Assembly (NCBI GenBank): GCA_907165135.1
Contig: OU015567.1
Location: 12,772,001-12,836,000, forward strand
DNA: 64,000 nucleotides
Direction: 5' to 3'
Source: Oikopleura dioica
Taxonomy: Eukaryota > Animalia > Chordata
The notes beneath the pieces are model-generated. The model saw only the letters and a list, made by a program, of their open reading frames with translations, was not told the origin of the DNA and searched no databases. Shown here piece after piece: positions 23,957 through 34,212 of the stretch (its first letter is position 1; each line of letters begins with the position of its first letter). Made by a program: the position numbers and the translations under genes.

Positions 23957-26885
23957 ATGGGAGTTATCGGATTATGGCGAATTCTAGGGCCCGGGACTCC
24001 CATTGACCCAGCAGAGCTTCGGTAAGCAATAATTATAGGAATGGCTCTAGTTTTATTTCTAGTGGTCAATGCTTATCAGTTGATCTGTCAATTTGGCTCC
24101 ATCGGGCGGTCCATGGAACTCGTGGAACTTCCGATGCTAGCCGGCGAGTGCAAGCCCTCAGCTCGCTTTTCAAGCGAGTTTGTGCCCTTTTAGCTATGGG
24201 AAAGGTTAAAATTTCAAGGCGTCGTTAACTACAGTTACAGAAGCGCATGATTTAACCCTATATTCTGGCATCAAACCGATCTTCGTTTTTGACGGAGCTC
24301 CGCCGCAAATCAAGTCTGAAACTCAAAAACGCAGGCGGGAGCGACGAGCTCAAGCAGAAAAAGACAAAATAAGCGCTAGAAAGAACCTCATGTCAAATGT
24401 CCTCAAGATGCATGCGTTGAAAACTGTAACCGACGAAGTAGTCACTCAGAAAGACATTGACAAGGTGATGAAAAAACTAGAAGCAGCGAGAGACGAAGAC
24501 CCAGAGGACTTTGGCTTTGTCTCGTCGGATTACAAAAAACCGGAGATCGTGGAATCAAGTGAGAGTGAAAGCGAAGAAACCAACGAGTTTGAGGAGCAAG
24601 AGATGAGTGCTTTTCAGCTCTCTGTTCGAGATAATATCCTTGGTGAGCTGGTCGAAACTGGAAAAGTCGATACGAAATCAAAGGCGTTCCAAAATCTCCG
24701 ATACTCTGATCAGCTTGGAATTTTAGACGAAGTGCGCGACTCATTCAAGTTTGATCGAAGCTATTTAACGGGTTATATTCACGAGAAAAAGAAAAAGGAA
24801 CAATCTCAAAAGTCACAAGAAGAACAAGACAAGGAATTTTCACAGTACCAGCTTGATGGGCTTCTCTCAAGGAATAACATTCGAAAAGAAATAAGACGAG
24901 TGGAGGATGAGAGCAAAAAGAACAAGCTAAGAGACGTGATTGAAAATTCGCAGGGAAAGCTTCGACAAGCCGGTCGGAAGTATGCTCTTTTCGAACAAGA
25001 GGAAGAGGAGCCAAAAGAAAAGGTCGCCAAATCGATCTTCGATCTTGAAGATAAAAAAGAAGACAAAACTGGGACGCTTTCAGAAAGCTCTTCCGAAGAT
25101 GAATTTGTCTCTGACGACTCAGAATACGAAATGACTCCTGATGAAACGATAAAAGTGCCTTGCACGAGTAGGCAGAATATTCTAGGGCTAAACTCTTCTA
25201 CCGGCGACGTGGAGTCTTCCTCTACCTCGGACATCGTCGACATTGAAATTCCAGAGTCGATCCTAAAAATGGCCCGCCTCGCCGCTGAGAAACGCGAAGC
25301 TGCGGCAAAGATGGAGGCTGACTTCAAAAATAAGATCCTCGAGTCAAGTGACTCCAGCGATGTGCAATTTGTTCATGGCGGGAAAGTGAGAAAGAGCGCG
25401 GCTGATACTTTAAAAAGTGGTGATACGCCTCAGCTGCCTTTGTGTGCATTGAGAAAGTATTTGGAGGAGTCTGAGGATTTTGTTGAAGTAACAGAGGGCC
25501 ATAAAATCGAACAAATTGACGAAAAGAGTGAGCCTGAATCAGAAGATGTTTTTGTGAGGAAAGAGAGTTCAGCTTGGCAGAAAAAGTTTAGCCCAGAAGA
25601 AGATGAGAGCACTCTTTCAACTACAGAAACTTTTGATGAAGGCGAAGAAGCACCAAAAGATGAAATAAAGGAGAAAAAAGTAGAAAATCATTCACCGGAA
25701 CTTTTATCTGATGAGTCCGGAGAAGGGATCAAGGAAGAGAAGGAGCTTATCATTTCTGAAGAGTCAACTATGGAGTCTGATAATAACCAAACTGAGACCA
25801 AGGAAGAAACTGCACATGCTTATTTCAACGCATTTATGAATGAAGCTTGGGAACGAATTTTGAGTGAAACGGTGCAAGAAGAAACTGATTCATATGTTTC
25901 GGATGTGCTTGTCGAAGAATCCTATGAAATCGAAGTTATTGAGGAAACCTTTTCCTCTATTATTCGCAGTTTTATTGAGGACATTACGGCTTTATCGTTC
26001 GCAGACAAGATGAAATCTGAACAACCGCATCAAGAAGCGAAACTTACCGAGCGTATCGAGGACTTTACCGCTGCAAGCATTCTCGAAGAAAATGCAATCC
26101 AGATTCAAAAGCTTTCATCGGCTGTAAAGCTGACTGCCATCCCCAGCCAACAGCTTTATAAAGACGCCGCGGAAATGCTGACACTCTTCGGCTGCGGGGT
26201 TTTCTTTGCACCAGGAGAAGCAGAAGCTCAGTGTGCGGAGTTTGAGATGAATAGAATCACTCAGGTACTGATCCCGATCGAATATTTTTCTTATATTGTT
26301 AAGGGAACAATTACTGATGATGGTGATACTTTCTTGTTCGGTGGTAAAGTGGTAATAAAGGGCCTCACTCTTGGAAACATGGTCCCTATCAAATACGACA
26401 TAGACGAAACTGATTTTTCAAGAGAATACTTGATCGCTCTCGCCCAGCTAACAGGATCTGACTATTGTGGTGGCATAAAATCAGTCGGAAGCAAGACTGC
26501 TTTGAAAATTCTTGAGGAATTCGACGACCGACGATCAGACGATCCTCATCTCACGTTGAATACTTTCGGGAAATGGTGGAAAACTCATCACAAAAGCCTA
26601 ACTACTGGAACAAACGGAATTCCTCTTCGGTCGAAGCTGAAAAAGCTAAATATTGATGCGGACTTTCCTTCCGATAGATCCAGACATGCATATCTTTACC
26701 CGAATGTCGAAAAACTCAAAGATAAGAAAATCCGGTTCACAGTCCCAGATCTTGAAAGGATTCGACGCTATGCTTTGCGAAAACTCGAGTGGCAAGAAGA
26801 AATGATCGATCAACATATTATTCCATTACTGCCAGAAAAAGTTGAAAAGCGGAAAGATATCCGTTTTTACATGAACGCTAAATAA
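23957..26885 (+). CDS. ERCC5: XPG/Rad2 structure-specific endonuclease (nucleotide excision repair)
   Basis: XPG-N: MGVIGLWRIL, VDLSIWLH, GIKPIFVFDG. Long acidic spacer. XPG-I: APGEAEAQCA, GTITDDGDTFLFGG, LAQLTGSDYCGGIKSVG, FPS...AYLYP. The long spacer separates it from FEN1/EXO1/GEN1. Confidence 0.9.
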
Positions 26886-26938
26886 GAAGTTCAAAGTATT
26901 GTAAGTGATTTAATTGTTTCTCTTTAGATAAATGAAAG

Positions 26939-29462
26939 ATGGTTTTTATGACAGCGAAAATATTCCATGAGCTTTGCGAAAGAAGAGAGGACTTCAACAA
27001 TTTCTTTGGTGTCGCTCTCACTTATCAAAAACATAACAGTAAGCTCACCCTCAATTTATCTTTTCTACTATTTTTGAAGATGGATTTGCGGTTGAAGCCG
27101 TGCCAGTGCGTGGCCAGGCGACAGAGGAAAGTGTTGCAAAAGCAACTTCTTTTCTCGGCGCATTTGCTATGTACAACAGCGACAACGAATGCGATGTGAT
27201 TCCGTTTCCCTCAGTTTTGAAACCGCTTTTCAAAGATTGCCTCGGTGGCCATCTGCGAAATATCATAGAAATGGAGAACAATGTCCGTCTCGATCAGTTA
27301 GACTCTTCTTCTCACGATATCGCTATTTTCGGGGACGCTGATGGTCGACTGGAAGTGTTATCCCAGCTGCTTGAATTCAGTGAAGTCATCAATGGGAAAG
27401 CAGCGCCTCCTAACGAGCCCACTGATCACCACGTCCAAGAACAGCTTGAGATGATTTTTCGGGAAGTAAAAGAGCCGGATAGCAACAAACGACAGATTTA
27501 CGCACTTCCCTTTGGCGCGAAACGATTTCTATCGAGATATCTAAATTCAAAAAACATAAATTTCAAAAGAATTCGCGATGAAAATTCACAAGTTCGCGCA
27601 GCTCCAGTTCCTTCAGCCACGCCACCTAGAATCAGAAACGCATTTTTGTCTAATTTCAATCAAGAAGCAGCAATGCGCGCATCACAGCGAGCTCCGACAC
27701 CACCGGAAATAGTCAATCTCCTCGATGATTCCGAAGTTAGCCACCCCAGAGCACCTCCTGCTGAAGTCAACCCTGATCAAATGGGAGAGCGAATTTTTAA
27801 TGAACTACAGGAAATCAATCCCGACTGGGATTTGGAAGGAGCTCAAATGGAATGGCTCGTTTACGTAGAAGACTGCAAGGAACAAAATCGACCTGTAAAT
27901 TACAGGGAAGCGATGGAAAGAATCAAGAAAGTTGCAGCTCCACCAGCCGAGCCTGCTTTCGACACGTCAATTAACCAGGCAATTGGCCAACAAATCATCA
28001 GAGAGATTGAACAGCGACATAAGAACTGGAACATCGAAAAGGCCCAACTTGAGATGTTGAAAATCATAGAAGAGTGCAACGAGAAATCGATGAGGGTTGA
28101 TGTCAATGAAGCTCTTCGAAGAATTGAATTGGAGGCAAGCTTTGATTTGGAAGATTTGACGATTGAAGAGGATGATGAGCCGATGGAGAAGCTTGGAATT
28201 GAAGATGATGTCATCCAAGCTTGGTTTACTGAAAATTATGAAGGTGATTCTTTTGTTGTTGATCGGAAATACTAATTGGATTTCTAGACTCGAAGGCATA
28301 TAATATGAGCATTTACAAAAGCGATCTCTTCAAAGATTTCACATCGCATTTCGAGCTCTACTACTCCGGCGAAAACCACACTCGCCACTACCTCTCCTTC
28401 ATTGAAGTCATTCACAATTTTCTGAGCAAGAACAAGGCTCAATTCCCTAATGTGAAAACGAAGGGAAATACAGGCGTCAATGCCAAGAAGAGATTTCAGT
28501 ACCTACGAAGAAAAGGAACCGACAAGTACAAATTTTTCATTTTCGGCCTTTTTCATCATTTTTAGCGCGCTGCCAGTCGAAATTCCAAGTCCTCGGACAC
28601 AAGAAGACAGTATTCCAGGTTGGACAAATCTCGCTGCGGTGGTTAATCCCCGCATAGCTCCAATTTTAGTCGAGCAGAGCTTCCGATCTGTTCAAAAAGC
28701 GAAGAAAAACGAAGGTGATACCGACAGATACACACTGAAGTGCCCCTGGAATCCGCAATACAGCAATCTTTATCCAGGAGGAGAAGAAGGCGATCCAAGC
28801 TGTCGCCGGATCGTTATTGGTAAGAATAACCGCATTTCCTCTTTTCGAATTATCGGTCTAATTTAGATGGATCCAATATCGCCCGAAGCCACGGGAAAGT
28901 TGGCGAAATTAAACGACAGCACAAGGCAGAGATGTTTTCGATCATCGGAATCAAGATAACTGTCGAGCACTTTTGGAGTCTTGGCTGTCGCTCCGTTACT
29001 GTATTTCTCCCGCATAGTCGACAGGGAAATAAAGGAAGCCCGAAGATTCCAGAGAAGGAAAGAAAACTGCAGGAAGAGATGGAAAAGGAAGACATCATCA
29101 AATACACGCCGGGAAGATACCACAAGGGTACCAAGAAATTCATCCAGGCTTATGATGATAGGTTTTTTTCATTCAGCTGAGCAGAAAAGCTTATCTTCTT
29201 TTAGATATATTTTGGATATGGCAAAGGCGGAAGATGGAATCGTAGTCTCAAATGACCAGTATCGAGATTTGTACGATGAGTTCATGGACGTCATCAATTG
29301 GAGACTATTACCGTTCGTTTTCTTTTCCTCTATGGATGTCATAATTTCTCGTTTAGGTTCGTTATGACAGCAGACAGAATCATGATTCATGCGCAAGATC
29401 TTCCCTTCTCGGCGGAAAAACCACGCGTTACTCTCGAGCAGTTCATCCGAAAAAATAACTGA
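26939..29462 (+). CDS. KHNYN/N4BP1-like protein: N-terminal KH-like region plus C-terminal NYN (Regnase-type PIN) RNase domain
   Basis: The N-terminus (ERREDFNNFFGVAL...ATEESVAKATSFL...FPSVLKPLF...IAIFGDADG) resembles the N4BP1/KHNYN KH region. The C-terminus has RRIVID|GSNIARSHG, GIKITVEHFW, YDDR|YILDMA..DGIVVSNDQYRDL and RLLP|FV, the Regnase/NYN catalytic motifs. Confidence 0.82.
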
Positions 29463-29783
29463 TATTTTCCTGAGCCATAAAAATGGTCCGACCTTCTTTT
29501 GATTATTTGAGCCATAAGGTTGGTTCGGGTAATTATTATACCTGTTCATACACTTTCCTTTGCCGTGCGTGTGTTTTTGCAACTGATACAAAAGAAATTA
29601 TTGAAACAAACAAATACTACTAAAAATGAATATTTTATGCGCTGATTCTTGAAGTTCCATGTCTCCTTTCTTCTTCAGGACTAAACAGATATTACTTCTG
29701 ATTTATCACAAAAATTTGCCTCTTTGAAAACAAGAAAAATCAATCACCAATCACTTCAATTAACTCAGACATTGTGCTTTCAG

Positions 29784-31192
29784 ATGAAAGTGTTGTTTCT
29801 CCACCCAGATTTGGGGATAGGAGGCGCCGAAAGACTCGTTTGTGATGCCGGGCTTGCTCTGAAAAATAAGGGACACACAGTTTCTTTCGCCACAACTTAT
29901 CATGATCCGGGACATTGTTTCCCAGAAACAAGAAATGGAACATTTCCAGGTATCATCCGTTCTTCGCCCTTTTCTTACTTTTTAGTGACTGTGTTCTGCG
30001 ACTGGATGCCTCGGTCGATCTTCGGGAAATGCCGCGCTGCATGCATGTACATGCGGATGATATTCGCCGCTGTCTATCTTTGCCTCTTTTCTACTCAAGC
30101 AAAGGAAGCAGATGTAATATTCGTCGACCAAGTCTCTCATTGTGTTCCAATCTTGCGACTACTATCCAAGGCGAAGATCCTGTTCTACTGCCACTATCCG
30201 GATCAGCTCTTGTCGAAACCCGGCAGTGCGCTCAAAAGCTTGTACAGACTTCCAATGGATAAATTTGAAGAATATTCGACTGGCCAAGCTCACAAGGTAA
30301 AAACTTAACGGAGCAAAAAACTTCTTCATTTTAAGATTCTTGTCAACTCTTCATTCACTCTTCGAGTTTTTCGCGAAACATTCAAGTCTCTGAAAGATAT
30401 TCCAGTTGGAGTTCTATATCCAGGTAAACCTCGTTATTCTATTCCTTCAACTAAAACCATCCTTAGCGCTGCAAACAAAAGTCTTCGCCAAGAAAGCAAG
30501 AAAGCCCAACCGCTTCACAATCCCCTCTGACAAGCTTGTTATTTCATCAGTCAATCGTTATGAACGAAAAAAGGGGCTGATCATCGCATTTGAAGCGCTG
30601 GCACTTGTTAGAAAGCAGTTTCCGGAGACGAAAATTCATTTTATTCATGGAGGGGGATATGATCCTCAGAATGACGAAAATGTCGAGCATTTTGAAGAAC
30701 TTCAGGTTTGTTTCTGGCTATTCTCTGAGTTTTTATAATCGCTAGAAATCGGCTGGTAACCATGGATTCGTTGAAGGCCCAGAAGGCGACTATCAACTTC
30801 TTCGTGACTTGTCAAATGAAGACAAGCTTTTCCTTTTGCAAAAATCAAATGTAAACGTTTACACTCCAATCGGCGAGCATTTTGGAATTGTTCCTCTCGA
30901 AGCCATGGCTGCAGGAGTTCCTGTTATTGCCATGGCATCTGGTGGGCCACTTGAGACTGTGAAGGATGGGGAGACTGGTTTGCTTGTTCCTGAGCCTTTC
31001 GGAAAAATTGAAATGGCGAAGGTATGAGCAAATTATCCTAGCTGATAATTACTCTTTGTTTAGACGATTTCAAAGTTTATTGAAGAGTTCAACAAAACTG
31101 AAAGATCAAGAGTTTGCGCCCAACATGTCGCCGATAATTTCAGCTTCGAAGCATTCACGAGTCAGTTAGACTCGATTCTTACACAGCTTTGA
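29784..31192 (+). CDS. ALG2: Alpha-1,3/1,6-mannosyltransferase ALG2
   Basis: [100 protein letters not shown]. Confidence 0.96.
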
Positions 31193-31363
31193 AAAAGCAA
31201 CTGCTCTCGCAACTTGTTATCGAATCCTACCGTGCCTTGTTAGATTTTTTCTTAGACTACATTTTTAGCTTCTTCTTGCATGCAATTCATGCTTGTGCAA
31301 TATTTAAGGATATATTCTTATTGAAGAAAAATATAGTAAAAGAAGTTTTTCGTTTAGGTTTTT

Positions 31364-32501
31364 ATGAGCTGTGATGTGCGCGAATTCGGACTGTTTCATT
31401 TTTCTGTCGCAGCTGAGCGATACGAAGACCTATTAACCATCAATCAAGGGTACAAATTTACGATTCCATCTGATAATCCTGTGGATATATATTCCGTTGT
31501 TGATGAAGTTGCCGCGGCTCTTGCGAAAAAATGTCTTGACGAAGAATGCGTTGGGGATACAGTTCTTGTGGTCGTAGAAAATGATGCCGGAATCACATTC
31601 AAGCGCGAAGAGTGTCTTTCCAAGAAAAGCAGGGAAAAAGAGATCATTGGTGATGCGATAAAAGAACTGATAAGAATGGAGTTTATGTGGAAAAGACAGA
31701 AAATCAGCATTTTAAAAGTATCGCTCAAGTACAAAAAGGCGATGGAAATCAAGGAAGAGAACAAACACTTCGGGAGTACATTTTTCACGCACGAATGTTA
31801 CCAGGAAAATCGTGATCTTGCAATCATTGACGAAAAGGAACGTAGAGGAAAGGTCAACTGGGTGAAAGCGAAGACAGATAATTCACCCCTCAAAACCAAA
31901 GGAAGAAAATCGAAGAAGGAAATGATTAAGACTAAATCAATCACTGCTTTATTTGCAGAAAGTAAGGCGAAAAAGATAAAGAGAGAAACCAGCTGGAGCT
32001 CGATGAGATCAAACGAAGACAGTAATTCTAGAGAACCCCCTCTTATAGACATGACAAATGTCCCTGGAACTTCAAAGATGAATCTCTTTCTTCCGGAAGA
32101 AAACTCAAACTCAAGGGATTCTTTCGTGAGTTCGACTCCCTCCACTCCTGTCCCAACGACAAAGTTTCCAAAAGCAGCGCCACTTGTCCAAGAGTACCGA
32201 GATATCGATGAAAACAGCATGGATGCGTATTTGGAGAGCATAATATCTGATCCAAAAGAACGAGAGCTCATGAAAAAGTTCTCTGGGCTGAAAACAAAAC
32301 CGATTGTCAATCACGGTAATTTGTTTTTAACGGTTGCAAATTTTATAAAATTTTTCAGTTAAAAAAGAACCACCGAAAACGGCTGCAAAGTCCAAACGAG
32401 GCCGACCAAAGAAGACTCCTCCAAAGATAACGGGATCTGTTCAAAGCAGCGCAATTTTTCAAATGTTCAAAAAGAGCGAAGACAAGAAAAAATCAAAATA
32501 G
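31364..32501 (+). CDS. Orphan protein: isolated Y-family DNA polymerase little-finger-like domain, low-complexity middle, C-terminal AT-hook
   Basis: Residues ~25-125 (TINQGYKF...YSVVDEVAAALAKKCLDEECVGDTVLVVVENDAGITFKREECLS...KEIIGDAIKELIRMEF...ISILKVSL) follow the pattern of the Pol kappa/DinB IMS_C domain by eye. The second exon (after the intron at ~32317-32359) encodes KSKRGRPKKTPP...SAIFQMFKK. Confidence 0.6.
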
Positions 32502-33025
32502 TAACTGCCTCCTTCCAACTTTTCCATATTATCCATCTTCTCTATTTTTATTTGTAAATAAAGTAAACAGATACTAGCAGAGACTTGCAGCAAAAATCCA
32601 ATAAGTATTGTGGAAAAATCCCGTCTTATTGGTGGTTGTATTGCTATTGCGCGGATAGAGCAGGAAAATTGAAAAAATACTGCACTAGCATATAGCATCA
32701 GTAAGCAGGATGTTCTTTAGAAGTTCAGCATTTATAAATCGAGCCGGACTCGCTTTTCTAATCATTGCGAATAAATCTTGAGGTTCATCAAAAGAGTGAA
32801 ATATTTACAAATAAGAACGTCATTGACAACGGTCCAAAAAGAGCGCTGACCGCTGCCTTATAACAAATCCTGTTCCATCAATCGGCAAGAAACTCGACAA
32901 GGTTTGTTCGCGCGGCAAGATTACGAAATCTTGAGAGATCGGGCGTCCATGAAGCAGATATAAAATTTCCTTTTAGTGAAAGAACTTGGTTTCGATAACT
33001 CGATAAGAGATCCAAGCAACAATAA

Positions 33026-34212
33026 ATGAAGCTCTCCACCGTCCTTTTCGCCGCTGCCGCCGCCCAGGATGAAGGCTCCGACCGATGGACTTACTCTGAC
33101 TACTCCGTCGACAACAACCTCTCCCTTTACGGCGGTAAGGCAGGTGCTGCCACCTCTGGCGCATACGGTTACGGTACTGATGGCAAAAAGCACGGTAATG
33201 GCCGATTCTGCCACTCAACCAAGGATACCGTCCATATTTACCGATGGGACGTTTCCAAGTACGGTTACTTCGCCCACTACAACCAGGTCGAGTGCGTCGG
33301 CGAGGAACTCTACTGCTTCATCGAGGAGCGAGCTCATTTTGGTCAGATCATTGGAATCCGAGCCGGTTGTGCTCAGATGATGAACCATCCACAGGTTGAA
33401 CGAAATGACGCCGACAACACTAGCTTCAACGCTCTTCCATTCATCTCCCCCGTTTACAACCAAGAGGCTGCTCGAGGCAGAACATTCGACCAAAACAACA
33501 AAACCGGCACCGCCTACATCTACTACGGTATCGGTGGTTGCTTGTCTCACCCTGCTCAAAATGGTAACGACCAACTCAACTCGCAGTTCCTCACCTCCAT
33601 GAGCAAGAACCATTACGCTTATGGACATGGCGGCTGGTACCAGAGCCAGTGTCTCCGAACTAACGGACCTAATGGTAACGCCGAACTCTTGCCTTTCGGT
33701 GTTTCCGTTTGCCGTGCTTGCTGCCTCGCTACTTACTCCGATGATATGTACCTTGACGCTCCCAGAACACCAGACACTGCTGACACCCCCGGTTCTAACC
33801 GAGGTGTCTGCAACTTCCTTCCATACCCAGCTCAAGGAGGAAATGCGGGTTTACCAAAGATCCCCGACGAAACCGTTTTCGATTGCTACAAAGGAGTTCT
33901 CTCTGACAACCCAATGACTAACAATTGCGACTCTACAACAGTGAGCGATGCTACCGGATGTGATTACTGCACTAAGCAGGTACAAAATCACCCTTAAAAT
34001 CAGTACTAAAAATCATTTAGATCTACCCAACTCTTACCATGTACGAAGTCCCCAGCTACGAGTCGGACTTTTCTCAAAATCTCTTCGAGTCTAACTTTGT
34101 CCGATCTTCTGGAGCTGATGCAGAGGGTCCATGTGCTTACGGTACGCCCGGAGACTACACCTCGACTCCCAACTGCACTCCAACTGGTGTCATCGCCCAG
34201 CCCATGGTTTAA
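33026..34212 (+). CDS. Secreted cysteine-rich protein (three-finger/Ly6-like Cys pattern; candidate house/oikosin-type protein)
   Basis: Signal peptide MKLSTVLFAAAAAQ and strongly C-ending codons. Cys pattern FCHS...ECVGEELYCFIEER...IRAGC...QCLR...SVCRACC...CNF. Intron 33980-34020, then a final exon IYPTLTMYE...AQPMV* (TAA 34210-34212). Confidence 0.8.

What the first reader, a model, noticed from the sequence alone, without database searches (positions are those of the whole stretch)
31364..32501. Stand-alone Y-family polymerase little-finger-like protein with AT-hook and PIP-like motifs but no catalytic core
Seen: the N-terminal ~125 aa parallel the Pol kappa thumb-end and little finger as I recall it (YSVVDEVAAALAKKCLDEECVGDTVLVVVEN...R...KEL vs YSLCQELCSELAQDLQKERLKGRTVTIKLKN...R...KEL). 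ALG2 ends only 171 nt upstream, leaving no room for palm or finger domains. The tail has KRGRPKK (AT-hook) and two PIP/RIR-like stretches (KSITALF, SAIFQMF). Known: little fingers bind DNA, Pol kappa contributes to NER repair synthesis, and Oikopleura has a remodelled repair toolkit lacking canonical NHEJ. Inference: a non-catalytic DNA/PCNA-binding adaptor or TLS regulator, possibly co-transcribed with XPG. This is the best candidate for an undescribed component in the window.
Basis: inference. Interest (0 to 1): 0.75.

Follow-up and report, generated by a model that had tools for sequence, protein, structure and literature searches.

The report
Polymerase-kappa little finger without a polymerase
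The tunicate Oikopleura dioica keeps, under selection, a small gene that encodes only the DNA-gripping "little finger" domain and the disordered docking tail of a translesion DNA polymerase (closest to Pol kappa), so the protein cannot copy DNA and probably works as a non-catalytic adaptor.

Summary
A two-exon gene (31364-32315 and 32359-32501, + strand) starts 171 nt after the ALG2 stop codon. It is the unnamed model g7605 of the OKI2018_I69 assembly.

- **Domain identity.** Residues 21-128 form a Y-family polymerase little finger. Pfam IMS_C matches all three Oikopleura lineages (best E 3.5e-7; this copy 0.0024, below Pfam's cut-off). The AlphaFold core (pLDDT about 80-90) matches the human Pol kappa little finger, residues 411-518, at Z 16.4 and rmsd 2.2 Å. 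Other Y-family little fingers score at most 13.8 and unrelated folds at most 9.7.
- **No catalytic core.** Neither the ORF nor the 64-kb window holds palm, fingers or thumb.
- **Real gene.** The start codon, a TTTAG six bases before it, the terminal intron and the ALG2 neighbour are conserved in a lineage about 25 My apart. dN/dS is about 0.25. A spliced RNA contig exists in the sister lineage.

Binding to PCNA, REV1 or DNA is inferred, not shown. The mRNA 5' end is unobserved, and I could not test whether a catalytic Y-family gene exists elsewhere in the genome.

The parts
31270..31316 (+). Conserved 47-nt block upstream of the start codon, containing the TATA-like TATTTAAGG at 31301. Possibly a core promoter or regulatory element.
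   Evidence: 41 of 48 aligned positions match the L001 lineage, while the rest of the intergenic DNA does not align. The block is absent from the third lineage (L002/L009). Its function was not tested.
31353..31357 (+). TTTAG, a 3' splice-acceptor-like site 6 nt before the ATG. Candidate spliced-leader acceptor. Its TAG is also an in-frame stop.
   Evidence: TTTAG-N6-ATG is invariant in all four sequence groups: window, L001/L007/L010, L002 and L009. Its use as an acceptor is inferred.
31364..32315 (+). Exon 1: 317 codons plus the first base of a split codon.
   Evidence: The same start is used by NCBI model CAG5113501.1 (P0002).
31370..31405 (+). Conserved N-terminal peptide CDVREFGLFHFS (residues 3-14), predicted disordered. 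Function unexplained.
   Evidence: D4, R6, F8, G9, L10, F11, F13 and S14 are invariant in three lineages. pLDDT is 27-38.
31424..31747 (+). Little-finger (IMS_C / polymerase-associated) domain, residues 21-128.
   Evidence: Pfam IMS_C. AlphaFold strands 24-36, 62-73, 78-89 and 114-125, helices 39-60 and 92-108. Human Pol kappa residues 411-518 match at Z 16.4, rmsd 2.2 Å over 105 residues. Foldseek and ESM Atlas searches agree.
31772..31795 (+). GSTFFTHE: a conserved S-x-F-F motif resembling a REV1-interacting region.
   Evidence: S138, F140 and F141 are invariant between lineages (NSPFFANK in the other lineage). Binding was not tested.
31841..31936 (+). Basic stretch, residues 160-191 (RRGK...KGRKSKKEMIKTK). 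Candidate nuclear localisation signal or DNA contact.
   Evidence: Net charge is +5 and +4 in the two 20-residue bins covering residues 161-200. K179, G180, K184 and K185 are invariant.
31934..31960 (+). KSITALFAE: PIP-like motif 1 (I-x-x-L-F).
   Evidence: I193 and F197 are invariant; the other lineage has ANILTMF. AlphaFold places a low-confidence helix at 191-204. Not a canonical PIP box.
32027..32089 (+). Conserved block SREPPLIDMTNVPGTSKMNLF (residues 222-242), function unknown.
   Evidence: Model P0002 splices out 31962-32048, which includes the start of this block, but the sister-lineage RNA contig retains the region.
32168..32314 (+). Most conserved part of the tail (residues 269-317: PKAAPLVQEYRDIDENSMDAYLESIISDPKERE...VNH), with three weakly predicted helices.
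   Evidence: Runs of invariant residues. Helices at 272-278, 283-293 and 297-307 with pLDDT 57-68. No Pfam match.
32316..32358 (+). Phase-1 GT-AG intron, 43 nt.
   Evidence: GT and AG were checked. The same intron position is spliced out in sister-lineage RNA contig L006 (VNH|SKLQ) and in models P0002 and P0005.
32359..32501 (+). Exon 2: the basic C-terminal tail ending at TAG 32499-32501.
32394..32414 (+). KRGRPKK: AT-hook-like RGRP core, or part of a nuclear localisation signal.
   Evidence: RGRPKKTPPK is identical in the Bergen-type lineage.
32445..32468 (+). SSAIFQMF: C-terminal PIP-like motif 2 (I-x-x-M-F followed by KK).
   Evidence: IFQMFKK is identical in both lineages. The position at the extreme C-terminus after a basic stretch resembles Pol kappa and Pol eta (my own knowledge).
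32557..32562 (+). AATAAA, a candidate polyadenylation signal 55 nt after the stop codon.
   Evidence: Read directly from the sequence.

Best explanation
This is a real, expressed Oikopleura gene that descends from a DinB/Pol kappa-type Y-family DNA polymerase. It has kept only the little-finger domain and the disordered regulatory tail. The N-clasp, palm, fingers and thumb are gone, so the protein cannot polymerise DNA.

The most likely mode of action is non-catalytic. The basic stretches (AT-hook-like RGRPKK, possible nuclear localisation signals) would take it to the nucleus and DNA. The little finger would supply a DNA- or clamp-facing surface. The short conserved motifs (S-x-FF and two I-x-x-[LM]-F) would dock it on the hubs that normally recruit translesion polymerases: PCNA, and REV1 if present. 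It would then act as an adaptor or a competitor at stalled forks or repair gaps.

Shown here: domain identity, absence of a core in the ORF and window, conservation, purifying selection, and transcription with splicing in a sister lineage.

Inferred: every binding partner and the cellular role.
For: Domain identity:
- Pfam IMS_C matches 3 of 3 lineages, best E 3.5e-7, and is the only Pfam match in exon 1.
- The AlphaFold core has block-mean pLDDT 79-92 and the beta-alpha-beta-beta-alpha-beta order.
- An exhaustive search of 48,161 solved chains puts human Pol kappa residues 411-518 first (Z 16.4 and 16.1, rmsd 2.2-2.4 Å, 19% identity). Pol eta, REV1, Pol IV, Pol iota and Dpo4 score 13.1-13.8, and unrelated folds score 9.7 or less.
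- All top 50 Foldseek hits are Y-family. ESM Atlas searches agree.
- PDB entry 1unn shows that an isolated Pol IV little finger is a stable clamp-binding module (listed).

No catalytic core:
- The little finger begins about 20 residues after the start codon.
- An in-frame TAG lies two codons (6 nt) before the ATG.
- tblastn of E. coli DinB against the 64-kb window gives a best E of 1.
- No annotated neighbour carries the IMS family.

Real gene:
- Orthologues at 49% identity share the start, the motifs and the intron position. ALG2 next door is 89% identical.
- The order XPG, NYN RNase, ALG2, this gene is conserved between the Okinawa and Bergen assemblies.
- dN/dS is 0.24-0.35, with an excess of synonymous changes at p = 0.007 and 0.0002.
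- Logan contig L006 is spliced at the terminal intron.

Tail: it is disordered and carries the conserved FF, I-x-x-[LM]-F and RGRPKK motifs.
Against: - No binding was tested.
- Neither PIP-like motif is canonical: both lack the Q, and both have L or M where an aromatic residue is expected.
- There is no UBZ zinc finger; no C-x-x-C was found.
- The little finger is slightly acidic (net charge -2, pI 5.3), whereas the E. coli Pol IV little finger is +1 with pI 8.1. DNA binding by the domain is therefore not assured.
- Sequence searches against solved Y-family polymerases found nothing, so the homology rests on the Pfam profile and on structure.
- The gene evolves fast (49% identity in about 25 My; and PMC11067885), which suggests weak or shifting constraint.
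- The mRNA 5' end was not seen. The RNA runs I laid belonged to another lineage and gave no reads on the gene.
- A published list of repair genes thought absent from O. dioica does not include POLK, POLH or REV1 (PMC4122922, Table 2). A catalytic Y-family enzyme may therefore exist elsewhere, which would make this gene a partial paralogue.
Confidence: 0.6

Rival explanations
1. Split polymerase. The catalytic core (palm, fingers, thumb) is encoded by a separate gene elsewhere in the genome, and this little finger joins it in trans to rebuild a working Pol kappa-like enzyme. The conserved N-terminal peptide could be the docking element.
For: The little finger connects to the thumb by a flexible linker in all Y-family structures (established knowledge). 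The first 20 residues, which are not part of the little finger, are strongly conserved yet disordered, as expected for a docking peptide. POLK is not on the published list of repair genes absent from O. dioica (PMC4122922).
Against: No core-only gene is known or was found. None lies within 30 kb on either side. The tail carries its own recruitment motifs, so the protein looks self-sufficient as an adaptor.
Confidence: 0.12
2. Incomplete gene model. The AG at 31356-31357 is a cis-splice acceptor, and the mRNA continues from distant upstream exons that encode the catalytic core, with ALG2 lying inside a large intron.
For: The 6 nt between the AG and the ATG contain no stop in any of the lineages, so an upstream exon could join in frame. 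The 5' end of the mRNA was not observed.
Against: The ATG lies exactly 6 nt after TTTAG in four sequence groups, as expected for a start codon after a leader acceptor. The OKI2018_I69 model, built with transcriptome hints (PMC11067885), starts at this ATG. The upstream same-strand genes are ALG2, a NYN RNase and XPG, none with the IMS family, in two lineages. DinB tblastn finds nothing in the window. Oikopleura introns are mostly tiny (my own knowledge).
Confidence: 0.08
3. The domain has been co-opted for a job unrelated to translesion synthesis, for example a chromatin or DNA-binding protein that uses the AT-hook and the little finger. On this view the FF and I-x-x-[LM]-F stretches are not PCNA or REV1 ligands.
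For: The motifs are degenerate. The gene evolves fast. There is no UBZ. The RGRP core and basic stretches are the best-conserved features of exon 2. The most conserved tail block (residues 269-317) matches no known family.
Against: The order of elements (little finger, then FF, then a basic stretch, then a C-terminal hydrophobic motif at the very end) mirrors Y-family polymerase tails (my own knowledge). The aromatic and hydrophobic positions of all three motifs are invariant between lineages.
Confidence: 0.15
4. A decaying remnant with no function, still open only by chance.
For: Fast divergence and loss of the catalytic domain.
Against: The ORF is intact in at least three lineages, the intron and start are conserved, dN/dS is about 0.25 with a significant excess of synonymous changes, and spliced RNA exists.
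Confidence: 0.05

Closest known systems
DNA polymerase kappa (POLK; DinB branch of the Y family), little-finger/PAD domain plus C-terminal regulatory tail
   Same: The little-finger fold is the best structural match (human residues 411-518, Z 16.4, rmsd 2.2 Å, 19-21% identity). Behind it lies a disordered tail with an FF motif soon after the domain, basic stretches and a hydrophobic clamp-type motif at the extreme C-terminus. The layout of the Pol kappa tail is from my own knowledge.
   Different: There is no N-clasp, palm, fingers or thumb, so no catalysis. There are no UBZ zinc fingers. The PIP-like motifs are non-canonical. The protein is about 364 aa by my count of 317 + 1 + 46 codons, against 870 aa for human Pol kappa (my own knowledge).
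ImuB, the catalytically dead bacterial Y-family homologue that serves as a clamp-binding adaptor in the ImuA-ImuB-DnaE2 mutasome
   Same: A Y-family derivative that has given up catalysis and is thought to work as a hub through a clamp-binding motif. This is the nearest analogue in mode of action (my own knowledge).
   Different: ImuB keeps the whole polymerase fold and has lost only the catalytic residues. Here the core is deleted altogether. ImuB is bacterial and this gene is from an animal. No relationship beyond the shared family.
Isolated little finger of E. coli Pol IV (PDB 1unn) and truncated IMS_C-only proteins in metagenomes
   Same: 1unn shows that the domain is stable alone and can bind a sliding clamp. 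ESM Atlas holds clusters of 167-204 aa that carry only IMS_C.
   Different: 1unn is an engineered fragment. The Atlas clusters are bacterial and often labelled as fragments. None is a conserved eukaryotic gene with its own tail.
REV1 as a non-catalytic scaffold
   Same: It is a Y-family member whose main role in translesion synthesis is scaffolding rather than synthesis (PMC13250573 abstract, listed).
   Different: REV1 retains a complete catalytic core plus BRCT, UBM and C-terminal domains. Its little finger matches less well (Z 13.3).

Membership tests
Y-family DNA polymerase (functional enzyme) | Palm domain with the catalytic carboxylates (Pfam IMS, PF00817), plus fingers and thumb | tested here: not met
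   Pfam at E up to 10 finds only IMS_C in exon 1. The little finger starts at residue 21. No DinB-like core is in the window or in the annotated neighbours.
Y-family DNA polymerase (domain homology) | Little-finger / IMS_C domain (PF11799) with beta-alpha-beta-beta-alpha-beta topology | tested here: met
   IMS_C matches 3 of 3 lineages, best E 3.5e-7. This copy scores 16.7-18.7 bits, below the 20.7 cut-off. Topology. Structural Z 13-16 to ten Y-family entries against 9.7 or less for other folds.
Pol kappa / DinB subfamily | The little finger is closest to Pol kappa rather than Pol eta, Pol iota or REV1 | tested here: met
   Pol kappa scores Z 16.4 and 16.1 with 19% identity; the next best are Pol eta 13.8 and REV1 13.3. 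The Foldseek top ranks are DinB-type enzymes and Pol kappa. Orthology itself is not proven.
Pol kappa / DinB subfamily | N-clasp and UBZ zinc fingers of animal Pol kappa | tested here: not met
   The protein has no N-terminal region before the little finger, and no C-x-x-C anywhere in the sequence.
PIP-box proteins (PCNA ligands) | Q-x-x-[ILM]-x-x-[FY]-[FY] | tested here: not met
   A regular-expression scan finds no canonical PIP box. There are two conserved I-x-x-[LM]-F motifs, at residues 193-197 and at the C-terminus.
PIP-box proteins (PCNA ligands) | Physical binding to PCNA | not testable with these tools
   Needs pull-down, ITC or a complex prediction. Only single-chain folding was available.
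REV1-interacting region (RIR) | Two consecutive Phe preceded by an N-cap residue (S, T, P or N) and followed by helix-prone residues | tested here: inconclusive
   GSTFFTHE here and NSPFFANK in the other lineage are conserved. The motif is short, and the presence of REV1 in this genome was not tested.
AT-hook | R-G-R-P core flanked by basic residues | tested here: met
   SKRGRPKKTPPK here and KTRGRPKKTPPK in the other lineage. DNA binding was not tested, and the stretch could equally be a nuclear localisation signal.

The most novel reading that the evidence does not exclude
Oikopleura has discarded Pol kappa catalysis but domesticated the enzyme's little finger and docking tail as an independent, selected gene. 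That would be a eukaryotic counterpart of the bacterial ImuB idea: a non-catalytic protein that manages traffic at the clamp, or caps DNA ends or gaps, in a genome that repairs breaks without classical end joining. Alternatively, the gene is one half of a naturally split Y-family polymerase that assembles in trans. The divergent extra PCNA paralogues that this scan reported elsewhere in the genome could be its partners; this was not tested.
Probability: 0.3. Interest if true: 0.75.

Novelty: new variant of a known kind. Interest (0 to 1): 0.55.

Why it matters
Y-family polymerases are treated as indivisible, with the catalytic core and little finger together. Their non-catalytic roles in recruitment, scaffolding and competition at PCNA are hard to separate from synthesis.

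A natural, conserved protein made only of the little finger and the recruitment tail would isolate those roles in an animal. That animal belongs to a chordate lineage with very fast sequence evolution, extreme genome scrambling and no classical end joining.

The finding also gives a name to proteins that databases list as uncharacterised (CAG5113501.1, E4YRZ7, E4YI43). It shows that the Bergen gene models are cut short at the N-terminus.

If a catalytic POLK is absent genome-wide, this would be a clear case of a polymerase accessory domain outliving its enzyme.

Tried and rejected
- **Sequence searches of solved structures.** Searches with this protein, with P0006 and with two profiles found no Y-family chain. 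hhalign against E. coli DinB found nothing. Sequence-level homology therefore rests on the Pfam profile alone.
- **Exhaustive HMMER profile search of 1.84 billion representatives.** It returned only three clusters, all copies of this gene itself (P0003, P0001, P0006). No longer relative or fusion was detectable.
- **RNA reads.** The only raw-read RNA runs with the species label belong to the other lineage. They gave 8 partial reads on the ALG2 end and none on the gene.
- **L007 as possible evidence for a polycistronic transcript.** It turned out to be unspliced genomic DNA.
- **The tail.** Pfam found only a sub-threshold TC1 match in exon 2, which I judge to be low-complexity noise. ESM Atlas features scored 0.76, which is noise. 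AlphaFold gave only weak helices. A ubiquitin-binding UBM or UBZ reading has no support.
- **Rfam on 31000-33000.** Nothing meaningful.
- **Literature.** No paper in the library links Oikopleura with Pol kappa, the Y family or translesion polymerases. A search for a stand-alone little-finger protein found none.
- **Genome-wide search for a Y-family catalytic core in O. dioica.** No tool here searches a eukaryotic genome or filters by taxon. A DinB query to the large protein database would return only bacteria, so I did not run it.
- **Pseudogene reading.** Rejected on dN/dS and the spliced RNA.

Full report
**Where the window is and what the gene looks like.** The window matches chromosome 2 of the Oikopleura dioica OKI2018_I69 assembly (OU015567.1, about 12.80 Mb). 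The finding is the annotated but unnamed gene g7605 (CAG5113501.1, P0002).

On the + strand an ORF starts at ATG 31364. GT at 32316 and AG at 32358 bound a 43-nt phase-1 intron. Exon 2 (32359-32501) ends at TAG. An AATAAA follows the stop codon at 32557.

I did not build a hand-joined protein. Where a joined sequence was needed I used the database proteins P0002 and P0005.

**Is the N-terminal domain a little finger?** Yes.
- Pfam finds IMS_C (PF11799) as the only family in exon 1. The match covers residues 34-120 at E 0.01, below the curated cut-off.
- When the first 145 residues of three lineages are scanned one by one, all three match IMS_C, with a best E of 3.5e-7.
- AlphaFold2 with a four-sequence alignment gives a confident core (block-mean pLDDT 79-92 for residues 21-120). 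The strand and helix order is beta-alpha-beta-beta-alpha-beta.
- All top 50 Foldseek hits in the PDB are Y-family polymerases, best E 8e-8.
- An exhaustive aligner run over 48,161 representative chains, independent of Foldseek, ranks the human Pol kappa little finger first: residues 411-518, Z 16.4, rmsd 2.2 Å over 105 residues, 19% identity. Pol eta, REV1, the E. coli Pol IV little finger, Pol iota and Dpo4/Dbh follow at Z 13.1-13.8. The first unrelated fold scores 9.7.
- ESM Atlas feature and shape searches give the same family.
- Plain sequence searches against solved structures, and a profile comparison with E. coli DinB, find nothing. The similarity is therefore remote in sequence but unambiguous in fold, and it leans towards the Pol kappa/DinB branch.

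**Is the catalytic core really missing?**
- The little finger begins about 20 residues after the start codon.
- An in-frame TAG lies two codons (6 nt) before the ATG. It belongs to a TTTAG that sits exactly 6 nt before the ATG in all four sequence groups I could compare: the window, the L001/L007/L010 lineage, L002 and L009.
- That geometry fits a spliced-leader acceptor just before a start codon. O. dioica resolves same-strand gene runs by trans-splicing (PMC11067885; PMC4122922). A 171-nt gap falls within the 500-bp rule that PMC11067885 uses to call operons.
- The upstream same-strand genes are ALG2, a NYN/Zc3h12a RNase and XPG, in both the Okinawa and the Bergen assemblies. None of them, and no downstream neighbour, carries the IMS family.
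- tblastn of E. coli DinB against the whole 64-kb window gives nothing better than E = 1.
- The 5' end of the mRNA was not observed, so a distant upstream exon is unlikely but not excluded.

**Is it a living gene?**
- Relatives exist only in Oikopleura. An exhaustive HMMER profile search of 1.84 billion representatives returned three clusters, all copies of this gene.
- The Bergen/North-Atlantic-type orthologue (L001, L005, L007, L008, L010) is 49% identical over 319 residues. The neighbouring ALG2 exon is 89% identical. These lineages split about 25 My ago (PMC11067885).
- Despite this speed, the start, the domain core, the motifs and the position and phase of the terminal intron are all conserved.
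- Nei-Gojobori dN/dS is 0.24-0.35 within the Bergen-type lineage: 8 synonymous against 8 non-synonymous changes over 191 and 769 sites, p = 0.007. It is 0.24 between two copies of a third lineage (L002 against L009, p = 0.0002).
- Logan contig L006 (SRR26184005) lacks the terminal intron (…VNH|SKLQ…). The gene is therefore transcribed and spliced in the sister lineage. The contig starts inside the little finger and says nothing about the 5' end.
- The RNA runs offered for this species proved to be that other lineage and put no reads on the gene. The single read-laying run was then spent.

**The tail.** The full exon-1 model is disordered from residue 128 to 281. It has only weak helices at 272-278, 283-293 and 297-307. 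The conserved short motifs are:
- S-x-F-F at residues 138-141 (GSTFFTHE here, NSPFFANK in the other lineage), right after the domain.
- A basic run at residues 160-191.
- I-x-x-[LM]-F at residues 193-197 (KSITALF here, ANILTMF in the other lineage).
- An unexplained block, SREPPL[IV]D..TN[VI]PGTS.MN.F.
- The best-conserved block, residues 269-317 (EYR.IDENSMDA.L..II.DPKERE), which matches no family.
- In exon 2, RGRPKKTPPK (an AT-hook core or a nuclear localisation signal) and a terminal IFQMFKK.

No canonical PIP box, no UBZ-type C-x-x-C and no UBM match is present. The N-terminal peptide [QE]FGLF[HY]FS is invariant but predicted disordered, and it remains unexplained. The little finger itself is slightly acidic (net -2, pI 5.3), so DNA binding may depend on the basic tail.

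**Interpretation.** The domain architecture is what remains if a Pol kappa-like protein is cut at the thumb/little-finger linker: little finger, FF motif, basic region and a C-terminal clamp-type motif.
- The protein cannot be a polymerase.
- My best reading (0.6) is a non-catalytic adaptor or competitor. It would use the retained recruitment motifs and DNA-binding elements at PCNA- and REV1-type hubs. This is functionally analogous to bacterial ImuB or to the scaffold role of REV1.
- The rivals are: a split polymerase working in trans with a core encoded elsewhere (0.12); co-option for an unrelated chromatin or DNA-binding role (0.15); an incomplete gene model (0.08); and a functionless remnant (0.05).
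- The published list of repair genes thought absent from O. dioica (PMC4122922, Table 2, after Denoeud et al. 2010) does not include POLK, POLH or REV1. A catalytic Y-family enzyme may therefore exist elsewhere. I had no tool to search the rest of this eukaryotic genome.

**Novelty.** In the paper library I found nothing that links Oikopleura with Y-family or translesion polymerases, and no description of a stand-alone eukaryotic little-finger protein. Databases list the protein as uncharacterised. I rate it a new variant of a known kind. Interest is moderate (0.55) and would rise if the genome-wide search shows that no Pol kappa core remains, or that the enzyme is split.

Noticed in passing
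window 31270-31316; L001 4341-4388: A 47-nt block between the ALG2 stop and the start codon is 41/48 identical between lineages whose proteins are only 49% identical, while the surrounding intergenic DNA does not align. It contains a TATA-like TATTTAAGG (TATTAAAGG in L001) about 60 nt before the ATG. It may be the gene's own promoter or another regulatory element. It is absent from the third lineage (L002/L009).
   Followed up: partly
window 31962-32048: NCBI model CAG5113501.1 (P0002) removes an in-frame 87-nt GT-AG segment (29 codons, SKAKK...PPLID) as an intron. The homologous segment is coding, partly conserved (SREPPL[IV]D) and retained in the spliced RNA contig of the sister lineage. It is either an optional intron in the Okinawa lineage or a prediction artefact.
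   Followed up: partly
L005 7836-8000 and L010 8836-9000: The Bergen reference models CBY38239.1 and CBY35154.1 (E4YRZ7, E4YI43; 310 aa) start at an internal Met. The open frame with the conserved N-terminus (MKPCDNREFGLF...) begins 165 nt further upstream, so both models lack the first 55 residues, including half of the little finger.
   Followed up: yes
window ~24390-32501; L004; L005; L010: The same-strand run XPG, NYN/Zc3h12a RNase, ALG2, little-finger gene is kept in the same order in the Okinawa and Bergen assemblies, although these lineages are reported to be extremely scrambled (PMC11067885). In the annotated Okinawa locus (L004), the gap between XPG and the RNase gene is only about 60 nt.
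   Followed up: partly
L002 505-860; L009: In a third lineage, known from Japanese metagenomes, the gene has an extra intron directly after the little finger. The DNA there is full of short repeated GACAGG/CCTGTC units. The upstream neighbour also seems to differ from ALG2.
   Followed up: no
window 31055-31196 (end of ALG2): RNA runs labelled with the same species name (X7-X9) match this window only at 90-95% identity, and only on the conserved end of ALG2. Their overhanging sequence equals L001. These public runs therefore come from the other cryptic lineage and cannot be used on this assembly.
   Followed up: yes
window 33026-33997: The next gene downstream has a 323-aa exon rich in Cys, Gly, Tyr and Asn with a signal-peptide-like start and no Pfam match. 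In the Okinawa annotation it is a 381-aa protein with no family.
   Followed up: no
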